Shown here piece by piece: positions 569 through 36,272 of a stretch of DNA of 44,452 nucleotides. Under the pieces are notes generated by a model that worked only from the letters and a program-made list of their open reading frames with translations, was not told where the DNA came from and searched no databases. The stretch spans positions 31,394 to 75,845 of the forward strand of contig MU619386.1 of assembly GCA_025201805.1 (NCBI GenBank), given 5' to 3'. The position numbers and the translations under genes are program-made. Each line of letters begins with the position of its first letter. Position 1 is the stretch's first letter. The stretch is from Parasitella parasitica NRRL 2501 (lineage: Eukaryota > Fungi > Mucoromycota).

Positions 569-1631
569 CTAGTTTTTTTCACGCTTTTTACTATGATGGT
601 ATGAACTTTTGAGGGAATTTGATGAGGTATAAGAAATAAAGAGTCCTTTAGCTTTTCCTTCATCATAGATTTTCTTCCATTTTTTTCGTTTGCCTGGTTC
701 AGAACTGCTTTCAATGAATTTATAGTCTTCTGCAATATATTTTTTCTGTTGCTTTTGTGATGCTTCTGCGTTCAATTCGTACATCTCAACTAGCTTTCTC
801 TTCTGTACTTCAATAGTTTCCAATAGATTTTCAGCGAAACCTTTGCACTTTTCAGCCGTCAAGATAGGATCTTCACCTAACCCGATTGCTTTCCTTATTT
901 GTTCTGTGCTTTGGTCGATAATTTCAACTAATTCACCATCTCCCTTTTTCTTCATGTTAGCCTTGCATATTGAGTATAAAAAGCGTACGGTTGAATCACC
1001 AGCATATTCTAATAAACTTAAGCTTGCAGATTGACAGGTGGTAAAGTAAGCCAGTGCCACAAGCTGATTCATGCCCACTTTGATATGATTTTCAATTGAT
1101 TTTGCAGAAATAAAGTTCACCTCCTGAGCCCAAAATTCGCATGCTGTTTCTAGCAAATATGGTGTGTTGACTTTTGGCACAAATTTTTGTTCAAATTCCT
1201 TGCTAGAGAACTTTACAACTACGAATACAAGAACCACAGGCAAAACTTGGAAACGTTCATACACACGAGTACAATACTGGATTAATCTTATCATAAATGC
1301 TTGATCGACGCTGTTTTGGATTTCTATCAAGATTGGAGGTTGATCATTATTCACTTCAGCGGGTACATATAAAACATCTGATTTCGTTCCATCTGACCAT
1401 TCTGTTGATGCCGAATGATATAGATTATTTGAAATGTTTGATCCTAAAAGAATTAACATCTGTAAGTAAAATTAGTTTGCTTTATGCGCAAAAAATGACA
1501 AAATTACCAAGCAGTTCGTGAATGATAATATTCTTTACAGTCTTATCGTTCATTATGAATTTACTAGTGCCATCTGTGTCTGGCCGTAGTTCAAAGGGCA
1601 GGTATAAATTGTTTTCATTGTTGTCTACCAT
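569..1631 (-). CDS. PD-(D/E)XK nuclease-family protein (Rpn/YhgA-like putative transposase), 2 exons
   Basis: Exon 1 1631-1508 (MVDNNENNLYLPFELRPDTDGTSKFIMNDK..), GT-AG intron 1507-1444, then in frame with the 569..1459 ORF. Motif SDVLY..PPILIEIQ..F..RLIQYC fits the D..E.Q core of Rpn-type PD-(D/E)XK nucleases. Confidence 0.65.
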
Positions 1632-10048: not shown

Positions 10049-10203
10049 TCCTTGCAAACCATCCAAATTTATTTCTTTTTCTCTTTAGTCGACTTTTTTC
10101 TACATTACTTATTTTGATTACTTGTGATTTCCATTGGGTGGTATTTCAGTAACCAAAAGAAATTTATCTCAAATTCATTCAGTCCAATTCAGTTCCAATA
10201 ATT

Positions 10204-11243
10204 ATGAACAACAACAGCAACACCAGCAGCGGCGTTAATGATTCTCTCACAGAGTTATTATCTTTACCTGTTAACTTTACTGTGGATCCTTTATTAGCTA
10301 CAACTCCAAACGGTGCGCCTCAAAAGAGACAAGCCTCATTTTCCTCTGCTTCTTCTGTTACATCTGAAAACGAGCAATCGTCTTCAGAATCTATCGTTTC
10401 TATCAAGAAGTCAAGATTATCTTTGGATGGTAAAGATCAAAAGACTAAAGAAAGGTAATATAAGGCACCCTGTTATATTCTCTAACATTTGCACTAAACG
10501 AACATCTTTTTAGAATTCTTCGTAATCGTGCAGCTGCTCAGGAATCTCGTGATAAAAAACGTAGATATGTCTCTGACCTTGAAGCGTCCAACAAAAAGCT
10601 CGCTCAAGAAAACGAAGAAGTGAATAAACGCGTAAAAACATTGGAACAGCAGAATGCTATATTGAATTCACAACTGGAAGCATTTACTAGACAACTAGCA
10701 AACTTGCAAGCGCAAATTAAATTCAATGCTGCTACTCCCATCTTGTTTAATGACTTTTGCGATTCAGCACGGATCGCGAAGAAAGAATGTTTGATTAACG
10801 AAAAGAAAAATAGTATAGAATTCATCTCTACAACCTCAAAAAGAAGCATCAAATCAGTATGTTGAATTGCCCATCAAGTCCTCTCACGAAAAAATCCACC
10901 CAATGGAAACCCCACTTGTAGAGCCCTGTTTTTTTTGAACTATATGATTTTTATATTTATTTCACCTCTTTGATATTATGAACAACTATTTTTTTTCCCT
11001 GCAGCGGAGGTTGTTAAGCAAGATGAGAATTGCCAGTATGGAAGAGGTTTATTAGTACCAGCTGCCACAGGCACAACTGCAAAACTGACATCACCCATGT
11101 TATCACCTTCGTTCTCATCGGACGAAGATTCTGTGTATTCGCCAAACACAATCGTCAATCAGGATTTCCACTTGGACGATTTATTTGACTGGGATGGTCA
11201 GCAGCAAGTTGTCAACACTATTGGCGGCAATGATACGTTCTAA
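10204..11243 (+). CDS. HAC1: Hac1/Xbp1-type UPR bZIP transcription factor (spliced 248 aa, unspliced 200 aa)
   Basis: bZIP KTKERILRNRAAAQESRDKKRRYVSDLE across spliceosomal intron 10455-10513. Removing 10768-11001 fuses it in frame to an acidic tail (..DFHLDDLFDWD..) ending TAA 11241-11243. Confidence 0.9.
10768..11001 (+). promoter_or_regulatory. Unconventional Ire1-cleaved intron (234 nt)
   Basis: 5' hairpin tttgcgatt-CAG|CACG-gatcgcgaa and 3' hairpin ttcc-CTG|CAGC-ggag, both with 7-nt loops. Flanking exons pair (10739-10756 with 11008-11025). Excision opens a long reading frame. Confidence 0.85.
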
Positions 11244-11374: not shown

Positions 11375-12298
11375 TCAGCTATCTAGCAACTGTCTAACGT
11401 TGTTGAAATAAGCGTGTTTCAATGCATCTTGGGCGCTGATTCTTAATTGAGGTTGGTATTGCAGCATTCGAGTTAACAAATCCAAACCTTCTGGATCGAT
11501 GTTTGGCACGAATTGGGATAGGGGCTGTGGCGGATGAACGACTTCTAGAGGTTTGTGTTTATATTCAGGAAGTTGCGAGATGCCTGGCCATGTTTGTTCG
11601 TTTGGTGTCCCCAATAAACGGAAAATCTTTTGCAATTGGTCTTCGTTAGTGGTGCCAGGAAACAGAGGTCTACTGGTATACATTTCAGCCATAATACAGC
11701 CGGCCGACCAGATATCAATGGACGTTGAATACATACGCGAGCCCAGCAACACATCAGGTGCACGGTACCAAAGCGTGACCACCTCATTCGAGAATGTGTT
11801 TACTGGGATACCAAATGCACGAGCTAAGCCGAAATCTCCCAGTTTTAGATGAAGTTGATTATTGATTAGTAGATTCTGCGGCTTCAAATCTCTATGCAGC
11901 ACACGGTGTTCGTGGCAGTAAGCTATTCCTCGAAGCAATTGATACATGAACGATGTGATTGTTTGCGGTCTCAGCGATCCATGAGGACGCGGATTTGAAT
12001 CCATGTACTTTTTCAAATCTTGGTCCATAAATTCAAAAACCAGAGTCAGTGTGTTTTCTGTGTGGATCACATCCTGAAGGCGCACAATATTGGGATGCTT
12101 GAGTTCTTTCATAAGAGAGATTTCTCGGATAGCTGTAGAAGGTGTTCCTTCCTCTGGGTCCAAGTAGATTTCCTTCAAAGCGACAATTTCTCCTGTTTGT
12201 GTGTGTTTGCCTTTGAAGACCGTTGCGTATGTTCCTTCACCAAGTTTTTCTAAACGTGCGTATCTTTGTTGAGGCAGACGGTTCGTGTTGGCTTCCAT
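11375..12298 (-). CDS. PHO85: Cyclin-dependent kinase Pho85/CDK5 type, intronless
   Basis: [70 protein letters not shown]. Confidence 0.93.
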
Positions 12299-35147: not shown

Positions 35148-36272
35148 TTAGAATAGCTCTTGCAGATCTTTTAGTGTAATAACGCCCATCCAGTTCATGT
35201 CGCTGCTATTTAGCACTGGTAACAGAGGAATGCTCTTTTCTTTCATGAGTGCAACTGCGTCTGAAGCCAGTCCTTCGTCATGAAAGATAACTGGATTTGC
35301 AGACATGATATCCACTGCGCGGATTTGAAAAATGCCTTCCTTGGTGGCGGATTTTAACACTCTGTGTATATCGCCATGAGTGATAACGCCCACAATCCGA
35401 GTGCATTTAGAAGACGAAATGTCGTAATCTTCGACCGAGGACGTTTCTGAAATGGGTGGCGATGGAAATAGACAGCTATTGCTGACAGCTTCTTCTGAAT
35501 TATGATGGCTCTCCGAAAAGTCGTCCTCCAGCACAATTACACCGCAGCCTTTAGGATGTTGAGTCATTTCCATGATAACAATGTCCAATGATGTATTTCT
35601 CTTCACTGTGGCGACTTTGGACGAATCAATAACAATGTCTTTGACTTTTAATAGTAATCTTCTGCCTAAAGAGCCGCCTGGATGATTCAGCGCAAAGCCA
35701 TCGGTAGTAAATGTCCGTAGTTTTGCTAGAGTCAAAGCCAAGGCATCGCCCAAAGCTAATGTCAGCGTAGTTGATGAGGTTGGAGCAGGAATGTCACCGG
35801 CTTCGCGCTGTACGTATCCATCAATCCAAGCAGCACATTCTCTGGCCAGCTTGCTCTTTGCATTGCCACCTAAGCCAATGACTGGGATTTGACGATGCTT
35901 TAAGCTAGGCAGCAGTGTGAGCAGTTCTTCAGTATTCCCAGAAAATGATAAAGCCAAGACAACATCATGGGACTGCACTGTACCAAGATCGCCATGCAAT
36001 GCCTCCACAGGGTGCAAAAACGTAGCACATGTGCCAGTTGACAGCATGGTAGCCACAATTTTCTCGCCAATCTTTCCAGACTTCCCCACACCAGTAACAA
36101 TGACCTTTCCTCCCGCATCCAGCGACTTGAACATGAGGTAAATTGCTTGATGGAATCCATCTCTTGAGTCTGTATTGCTCTTCAATCGCTGTGCAGCTTC
36201 ATTTATACTCAAAGCTTCTTCAATTAAGATGTTTGAAGCATTGTCAATGATATCCCGGGTTGTTTCAAGCAT
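35148..36272 (-). CDS. KpsF/GutQ/KdsD-family sugar-phosphate isomerase (SIS plus CBS pair), intronless
   Basis: GKVIVTGVGKSGKIGEK, FLHPVEALHGDLG, SFSGNTEE, APTSSTT..LALGDALA, FALNHPGGSLG, then CBS motifs (VGVITHGDI, LPVL..MGVIT). Confidence 0.9.
   Translation of the reverse strand: MLETTRDIIDNASNILIEEALSINEAAQRLKSNTDSRDGFHQAIYLMFKSLDAGGKVIVTGVGKSGKIGEKIVATMLSTGTCATFLHPVEALHGDLGTVQSHDVVLALSFSGNTEELLTLLPSLKHRQIPVIGLGGNAKSKLARECAAWIDGYVQREAGDIPAPTSSTTLTLALGDALALTLAKLRTFTTDGFALNHPGGSLGRRLLLKVKDIVIDSSKVATVKRNTSLDIVIMEMTQHPKGCGVIVLEDDFSESHHNSEEAVSNSCLFPSPPISETSSVEDYDISSSKCTRIVGVITHGDIHRVLKSATKEGIFQIRAVDIMSANPVIFHDEGLASDAVALMKEKSIPLLPVLNSSDMNWMGVITLKDLQELF

What the first reader, a model, noticed from the sequence alone, without database searches (positions are those of the whole stretch)
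10755..11243. Long (234-nt) non-spliceosomal Ire1-type intron that swaps the C-terminus of Hac1
Seen: two hairpins with 7-nt loops, CAG|CACG (cut after 10767, ~10-bp stem) and CTG|CAGC (cut after 11001). Joining them gives DSA-AEVVKQDE...DFHLDDLFDWDGQQQVVNTIGGNDTF*, an otherwise ATG-orphaned acidic/hydrophobic activation-like tail. The intron length is a multiple of 3 and it contains a stop, like the 252-nt yeast intron and unlike the 20-26-nt introns of Aspergillus hacA or XBP1. Standard gene callers would miss it.
Basis: partly seen in the sequence, partly recalled or inferred. Interest (0 to 1): 0.8.

Follow-up and report, generated by a model that had tools for sequence, protein, structure and literature searches.

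The report
Yeast-style locked HAC1 intron in Mucorales
This mould's master ER-stress gene carries a long intron of the kind cut out by the stress enzyme Ire1 (already reported in a relative), and that intron can base-pair with the start of its own mRNA, a translation lock so far described only in budding yeasts, apparently reinvented here but untested.

Summary
Observation confirmed. The gene is the Hac1 bZIP of Parasitella parasitica (Mucorales). Removing 10768-11001 (234 nt) swaps a 32-aa tail for a conserved 80-aa acidic tail. Both loops, the junction frame, a 22-bp exon-exon helix and a covarying intron-closing helix hold in 15 Mucorales/Umbelopsis loci (intron 121-302 nt; multiple of 3 is coincidence). 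Two public gene models and a Mortierella RNA-type contig show the same non-GT-AG junction; no GT donor is conserved. A non-canonical intron was already reported in the Rhizopus arrhizus ortholog (PMC10946435). Own-species RNA contigs show only the unspliced form, so this junction and Ire1 dependence are unshown here. What is new: intron 10896-10909 is perfectly complementary to 5'UTR 10128-10141, 20 nt from the transcript start; 14/14 orthologs keep 14-21 pairs with species-matched flanks (p 2e-4). Mortierella (47-62 nt) and a chytrid (26 nt, predicted) have short introns and no such element. This mirrors the S. cerevisiae translation lock, with unrelated sequence; I found no paper on it.

The parts
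10108..10203 (+). 5' UTR; RNA contigs of two runs begin at 10108
   Evidence: X1, X2 pieces start at 10108; next to no coverage 9914-10084. Contigs only approximate a start.
10128..10141 (+). 5'UTR strand of the UTR-intron duplex (G-rich, about 20 nt from the 5' end, -76 to -63 from ATG)
   Evidence: element present in 14/14 orthologs with upstream DNA; 11-68 nt from the 5' end of four mRNA-type contigs
10204..10454 (+). hac1 coding exon 1
   Evidence: P0001
10455..10513 (+). ordinary 59-nt GT-AG intron, removed in RNA
   Evidence: joint in run X1 at contig depth 10,760
10514..10767 (+). exon 2: bZIP domain up to the predicted 5' Ire1 cut
   Evidence: PF00170 E 6e-8, above cut-off
10739..10760 (+). 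5' strand of 22-bp exon-exon helix (S1/ES1-like zipper), partner 11004-11025
   Evidence: -28.2 kcal/mol, 3/500 synonymous recodings as stable; cognate vs non-cognate p 2.5e-5 over 8 lineages
10755..10781 (+). 5' splice hairpin, loop 10765-10771, cut after 10767; loop lacks the +3 G
   Evidence: loop invariant 15/15, one both-side change in the stem (3 Umbelopsis-type loci)
10768..11001 (+). 234-nt unconventional intron
   Evidence: retained in the dominant own-species RNA contig
10768..10865 (+). intron-encoded tail (32 aa) and stop of the unspliced 200-aa protein
10780..10789 (+). 5' strand of intron-closing helix (pairs with the U-rich stretch up to 10996); weak in this species, strong in others
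   Evidence: cognate -14.5 vs non-cognate -7.0, p 2.5e-5 over 8 lineages; this species only -7.2
10896..10909 (+). intron strand of the UTR-intron duplex (exact reverse complement of 10128-10141)
   Evidence: 14-nt match reached in 2/5000 shuffles, 0/370 real tiles of the window exceed 10 nt
10994..11010 (+). 3' splice hairpin, loop 10999-11005 (same as XBP1 consensus), cut after 11001
   Evidence: PMC4687415 consensus
11002..11243 (+). 3' exon: 80-aa Ser/Pro-rich, acidic tail ending near a conserved L-D-D-L-F-D-W motif
   Evidence: open and conserved in 15/15 loci; homologous motif in Mortierella

Best explanation
This is the UPR switch of a Mucorales fungus. In resting cells the hac1 mRNA has its GT-AG intron removed but keeps the 234-nt intron (shown). 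Intron bases 10896-10909 pair with 5'UTR bases 10128-10141 about 20 nt from the cap (pairing supported by conservation; formation in vivo inferred) and block 43S loading, as in S. cerevisiae (inferred by analogy); leak-through gives a 200-aa bZIP with a short tail and no activation-like domain. On ER stress Ire1 cuts after G3 of both loops (10767, 11001; inferred), the exons zip into a 22-bp helix (covariation shown), the sealing-only Trl1 plus separate healing enzymes join them (inferred from PMC10946435), the intron leaves with its UTR-binding strand, and a 248-aa Hac1 with the acidic tail is made. Odds: Ire1-type excision at these sites about 0.9; duplex acts as a translation block about 0.75 given that. 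Short introns without the element in Mortierella and a chytrid, and opposite G/C polarity to yeast, point to an origin independent of budding yeasts (inferred, thin sampling).
For: Loops, frame and tail conserved in 15/15 loci while intron length varies 121-302 nt. Exon-exon helix 16/16 paired at 10 positions with both-side changes at two, cognate beats non-cognate p 2.5e-5. Intron-closing helix covaries. Public models P0066 (Hesseltinella, 257-nt CA..TG intron) and P0051 (M. lusitanicus) equal the predicted product exactly. Logan contig L029 lacks exactly the predicted 62 nt relative to unspliced L015 in Mortierella. R. arrhizus ortholog P0021 has an RNA-seq non-canonical intron (PMC10946435). 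Ire1 KEN domain and Trl1 ligase present, RtcB not found. Duplex: 14-21 contiguous pairs in 14/14; species-specific flanks match their own partner, exact p 2.2e-4 over 8 lineages; A-to-G in the intron strand twice, leaving U-G; net -13.8 to -28.5 kcal/mol after local opening; cap distance like yeast's 30 nt (PMC8881652).
Against: No 10767^11002 joint in own-species RNA contigs (contigs drop rare forms, stress state unknown). 5' loop lacks the +3 G of the consensus and can close to 5 nt. The nine core duplex pairs are nearly invariant, so they give no covariation; the signal is in the flanks, and related species inflate such tests. Whole-mRNA folding gives the duplex as MFE in only 3 of 12 species and about 0 probability here, though the duplex crosses the intron-closing and exon helices (a pseudoknot the program cannot draw). 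An unconstrained duplex-energy shuffle of full UTR against intron was not significant (93/1000). No ribosome or protein data.
Confidence: 0.7

Rival explanations
1. Ire1-type splicing is real, but the UTR-intron complementarity does not block translation: it serves another RNA job (holding the ends together for ER targeting, decay or splicing, or making a protein-binding site), or both copies are DNA elements (they contain a CCAAT box).
For: Core sequence is invariant over Mucorales and Umbelopsis, more than pairing alone demands; both strands can form small self-hairpins in global folds.
Against: Always opposite orientation and complementary flanks; the intron copy loses CCAAT in two lineages while keeping a U-G pair; the upstream copy lies inside the transcript; the 12-mer occurs only 4 times in 32.8 Mb, two of them this pair. 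Position near the cap matches the yeast block.
Confidence: 0.2
2. The tail is joined by ordinary spliceosomal splicing: a GT donor at 10789, 10813 or 10861 to the AG at 11003-11004 behind a U-rich tract.
For: The 3' site looks like an acceptor; several ab initio models use it (P0053, P0052, P0050, P0072, P0029).
Against: No in-frame donor at all in Phycomyces, Hesseltinella, Syncephalastrum, Dichotomocladium; elsewhere the donors differ in place and are weak; branch-like motif in 4 of 14. The U-rich tract is the covarying partner of the intron's 5' strand. Own RNA removes the 59-nt intron but shows no joint into 11004.
Confidence: 0.05
3. Only the consensus 3' loop is an Ire1 site (decay or release of the lock by one cut), or the off-consensus 5' loop is cut by another nuclease.
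For: 5' loop lacks +3 G in 15/15 loci; Trl1 here lacks healing domains (PMC10946435).
Against: Joined products exist in public models and in the R. arrhizus report; the exon zipper and open conserved tail only make sense after ligation; the homologous Mortierella 5' loop fits the consensus.
Confidence: 0.05

Closest known systems
Rhizopus arrhizus HAC1 (G6F37_009984) non-canonical intron, Ahammed and van Hoof 2024, PMC10946435 Fig. 4A
   Same: Direct ortholog (P0021; same neighbour kinase); by my mapping the same two loops and junction, intron 172 nt.
   Different: The text gives no length, structure, conservation or 5'UTR pairing (figure not held); Ire1 dependence was not tested in Mucorales.
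Saccharomyces cerevisiae HAC1 252-nt intron with cap-proximal 5'UTR-intron duplex (Ruegsegger 2001; PMC8881652)
   Same: Long intron with in-frame stop, short unspliced tail, C-terminal swap, duplex 20-30 nt from the cap.
   Different: Unrelated sequence and opposite polarity (yeast UTR strand C-rich per the mutated bases listed in PMC8881652; here G-rich); longer perfect helix (14-21 vs 11-bp core); much longer new tail (45-96 aa vs 18 aa); no yeast-type 3' bipartite element looked for; ligase is sealing-only.
Metazoan XBP1 bifurcated stem-loop and RNA zipper (PMC4687415)
   Same: 3' loop equals the XBP1 consensus; long exon-exon stem that extends after cutting.
   Different: XBP1 intron is 26 nt and frameshifting, ligated by RTCB; here ten times longer, with a stop, and RtcB was not found.
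Long HAC1 introns of CTG-clade yeasts (C. parapsilosis 626 nt; PMC6222058)
   Same: Long introns arise repeatedly by expansion; long intron alone is not unusual.
   Different: That paper reports no UTR pairing (term absent); Ascomycota, not Mucoromycota.

Membership tests
Ire1-spliced HAC1/XBP1/bZIP60 intron | bZIP gene with the intron just downstream of the zipper | tested here: met
   PF00170 above cut-off; single close copy in the genome
Ire1-spliced HAC1/XBP1/bZIP60 intron | Two stem-loops with 7-nt loops at the splice sites | tested here: met
   10-bp and 5-bp stems; kept 15/15; the 5' loop can also close to 5 nt
Ire1-spliced HAC1/XBP1/bZIP60 intron | Loop consensus CxG|CxGx at the 3' site | tested here: met
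   15/15 loci; consensus from PMC8881652
Ire1-spliced HAC1/XBP1/bZIP60 intron | Loop consensus CxG|CxGx at the 5' site | tested here: not met
   C at +3, G at +4 in 15/15 loci; hence filed as a variant that works like the family, not as a textbook member
Ire1-spliced HAC1/XBP1/bZIP60 intron | Non GT-AG ends; removal replaces the C-terminus with a conserved tail | tested here: met
   CA..TG ends in all equivalent registers; tail open and conserved; two public models match
Ire1-spliced HAC1/XBP1/bZIP60 intron | Exon-exon stem (S1/ES1 zipper) | tested here: met
Ire1-spliced HAC1/XBP1/bZIP60 intron | Spliced RNA with this junction in this species | tested here: inconclusive
   Not seen in Logan contigs of four runs; seen for the Mortierella homolog and reported for R. 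arrhizus
Ire1-spliced HAC1/XBP1/bZIP60 intron | Cleavage by Ire1, induced by ER stress | not testable with these tools
   Only presence of Ire1 RNase domain and Trl1 ligase shown
S. cerevisiae-type 5'UTR-intron translation block | At least 11 contiguous pairs between 5'UTR and intron | tested here: met
   14 here, 14-21 in 14/14
S. cerevisiae-type 5'UTR-intron translation block | UTR strand within about 30 nt of the cap | tested here: met
   20 nt from the contig-defined start 10108; approximate, no cap mapping; up to 68 nt in one relative's contig
S. cerevisiae-type 5'UTR-intron translation block | Sequence homology to the yeast duplex | tested here: inconclusive
   No yeast sequence was fetched; base identities listed in PMC8881652 imply a C-rich UTR strand, opposite to this one
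S. cerevisiae-type 5'UTR-intron translation block | Unspliced mRNA is translationally repressed, relieved by breaking the pairs | not testable with these tools
   needs reporter or ribosome profiling

The most novel reading that the evidence does not exclude
Mucorales and Umbelopsidales independently rebuilt the whole budding-yeast HAC1 control package from a short-intron ancestor: a long intron with a stop, a cap-proximal 5'UTR-intron lock of unrelated sequence kept for roughly 400 million years (divergence figure from PMC10946435), possibly nucleated by two complementary hairpin loops or bound by a protein (which would explain the invariant core), a hydrophobic-ended unspliced tail that may be a degron, and an Ire1 that accepts a loop without the +3 G.
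Probability: 0.5. Interest if true: 0.65.

Novelty: new variant of a known kind. Interest (0 to 1): 0.5.

Why it matters
A 2026 review (PMC13703316) and PMC8002603 describe 5'UTR-intron pairing as limited to S. cerevisiae and close yeasts. Finding it conserved, with matching flank changes, across a whole early-diverging fungal lineage would be a clean case of convergent RNA regulation, and gives a second natural system to ask why long Ire1 introns need a lock. It also corrects Hac1 gene models across Mucorales (most are unspliced or forced into GT-AG), defines the natural mRNA substrate for the unusual sealing-only Trl1, and offers an off-consensus loop to probe Ire1 specificity. The long intron taken alone is ordinary and was already reported in Rhizopus.

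Tried and rejected
Rfam scan: no family for these introns at E up to 10. Intron length multiple of 3 as a yeast-like trait: rejected. Spliceosomal GT-AG route: rejected. U-rich tract as a polypyrimidine tract: better explained as a helix strand. CCAAT-box reading of the duplex strands: disfavoured. Whole-UTR duplex energy against shuffles: uninformative, long loose duplexes swamp it. Global mRNA folding: not supportive, but blind to the pseudoknot. Own-species junction: not found in contigs. Trl1 kinase-domain search: blank but its control rang nowhere, so weak. Hooks and Griffiths-Jones 2011 could not be read; it may already list Mucorales introns, though secondary citations say it found UTR pairing only in Saccharomyces-like yeasts. 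The large protein search was not used.

Full report
Identity. The unspliced reading 10204-10865 (with a 59-nt GT-AG intron at 10455-10513) is identical to a public Parasitella parasitica protein (P0001) and carries a bZIP domain. It is the only close copy in the genome. Its orthologs span Mucorales and Umbelopsis; one of them, R. arrhizus G6F37_009984 (P0021), was named the likely Hac1 by Ahammed and van Hoof, who saw an unannotated non-canonical intron in RNA-seq (PMC10946435). So the class of intron is already on record for this order; length, structure and conservation are not given in the text.

Observation. Four cut registers give the same product, none with GT-AG ends; the consensus 3' loop fixes the register. 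The spliced model was only translated in scripts; searches were made exon by exon by reference, and the joined step was left out.

Conservation. In 15 loci (10 genomes including the window, 5 metagenome-collection contigs) the 5' loop is invariant, the 3' loop fits CxG|CAGy, the junction always reads S-A-A/V-E, and the 3' exon is open for 45-96 aa and ends near an L-D-D-L-F-D-W-type motif. Codons around the 5' loop are frozen at synonymous sites. The 5' loop has C at +3, where the published consensus has G (PMC8881652).

Splicing architecture. The two exons form a long helix across the junction: 22 contiguous pairs here (10739-10760 with 11004-11025), matched by only 3 of 500 synonymous recodings; ten core positions are paired in 16/16 sequences with both-side changes at two positions; own-species pairs beat mixed pairs (p 2.5e-5 over 8 lineages). 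This is the zipper described for XBP1 (PMC4687415). The intron's ends also pair with species-specific sequences (p 2.5e-5; weak in this species), which explains the U-rich tract before the 3' loop without invoking a spliceosomal acceptor.

Transcript evidence. Run X1 (own species by 99% identity, RNA by its spliced joint) shows the transcript starting near 10108, the 59-nt intron removed, and the long intron retained in the dominant contig; neither the 234-nt joint nor any GT-AG joint into 11004 is listed. Contigs drop rare forms, so this shows the resting form only. Indirect support: public models for Hesseltinella (P0066) and M. lusitanicus (P0051) equal the non-canonical product letter for letter, which a GT-AG gene caller cannot produce (that they came from transcripts is my inference); and a Logan contig (L029) lacks exactly the 62 nt predicted for the Mortierella homolog. 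Other public models force GT donors at varying places, and four genera have no in-frame donor. The genome encodes an Ire1 RNase domain and a Trl1 ligase whose frame ends after the ligase domain; RtcB was not found.

The 5'UTR-intron duplex. Reading the orthologous introns showed one conserved island. It is the reverse complement of a conserved island upstream of the ATG: 10896-10909 with 10128-10141, 14 Watson-Crick pairs (2/5000 shuffles; no real tile of the window above 10). All 14 loci with upstream sequence keep 14-21 contiguous pairs. The core of nine pairs is almost invariant, with an A-to-G change in the intron strand in R. arrhizus and Dichotomocladium that leaves a U-G pair; the flanks differ by species and match their own partner (for example a CT repeat in the UTR against an AG repeat in the intron in Dichotomocladium), exact permutation p 2.2e-4 over 8 lineages. 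Relatedness can inflate this number. The UTR strand is inside the mRNA: 20 nt from the contig start here, 11-68 nt in four intron-less contigs. The 12-mer occurs four times in 32.8 Mb, two being this pair, so it is no common promoter motif. Net stability after local opening is -13.8 kcal/mol here and down to -28.5 elsewhere. Against: nested whole-mRNA folding picks it in only 3 of 12 species, but it crosses the intron-closing and exon helices and cannot be drawn together with them.

Origin. Four Mortierellaceae-type loci have 47-62-nt frameshifting introns with a long unspliced frame and lack both elements; a chytrid locus has two hairpins 26 nt apart (prediction only) and lacks them too. The yeast duplex has a C-rich UTR strand, this one a G-rich strand. 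Independent origin in the Mucorales-Umbelopsis ancestor is the simplest reading; Endogonales and Glomeromycotina were not sampled.

Mechanism. Resting: unspliced mRNA held silent by the cap-proximal duplex (inferred from S. cerevisiae, where a duplex about 30 nt from the cap blocks initiation; PMC8881652). Stress: Ire1 cuts both loops, exons zip, sealing-only Trl1 with separate healing enzymes ligates, the lock leaves with the intron, and the acidic-tailed Hac1 is made. Shown: sequence, conservation, covariation, intron retention, enzyme genes. Inferred: cleavage, stress control, repression, activation by the tail.

Novelty. The intron is a known kind and was reported in a relative. The duplex was not found in four literature searches on Mucorales/Mucor/Mucoromycota with Hac1 (also 71); a 2026 review calls such pairing not widespread (PMC13703316) and PMC8002603 cites the 2011 survey as limiting it to Saccharomyces-type long introns. 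That survey itself could not be read. Verdict: new variant of a known kind, interest 0.5; no function is yet tested.

Noticed in passing
L016:278-391, L018, L033 (Mortierellaceae hac1): A GT-AG intron sits inside the 5' Ire1 hairpin stem, so that hairpin can form only after nuclear splicing; the Ire1-type intron there is 47-62 nt and a spliced contig exists (L029, SRR33245415).
   Followed up: partly
L034:1838-1870 (chytrid Gaertneriomyces): Two hairpins with CTG|AAGy loops 26 nt apart, the XBP1 intron size; removal opens an acidic tail. Prediction only.
   Followed up: partly
window 10768-10865 and orthologs: Unspliced tails vary in length but tend to end in hydrophobic residues, often Cys at -2 (24%); last-two enrichment p 0.004 in 28 long tails, not phylogenetically independent. 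Possible C-terminal degron as in yeast Hac1u.
   Followed up: partly
window 10128-10141 and 10896-10909: Each duplex strand can fold a small hairpin whose loops are complementary (seen in global folds), suggesting loop-loop nucleation; speculative.
   Followed up: no
G000:C12:139677-140348 (L032): Trl1 reading frame ends shortly after the ligase domain, fitting the sealing-only type; kinase-domain search blank but uncontrolled.
   Followed up: partly
public proteins P0053, P0052, P0050, P0072, P0029: Gene models that force a GT-AG intron into the 3' Ire1 loop, with different donors per species; likely mis-annotations.
   Followed up: yes
window 11375-12295 (-): Intron-less Pho85/CDK5-like kinase, tail to tail with hac1 and syntenic in Rhizopus, Mucor, Syncephalastrum and Cunninghamella.
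   Followed up: partly
G000:C40:104087 and G000:C119:9626: Two other copies of the 12-nt UTR element in the genome; context not examined.
   Followed up: no
window 569-1459 (-): 296-aa ORF that by eye resembles Rpn/PD-(D/E)XK nuclease-type proteins; from memory, not scanned.
   Followed up: no
window 35148-36272 (-): 374-aa ORF that by eye resembles a KdsD/GutQ sugar isomerase with CBS domains, bacterial-like; from memory, not scanned.
   Followed up: no
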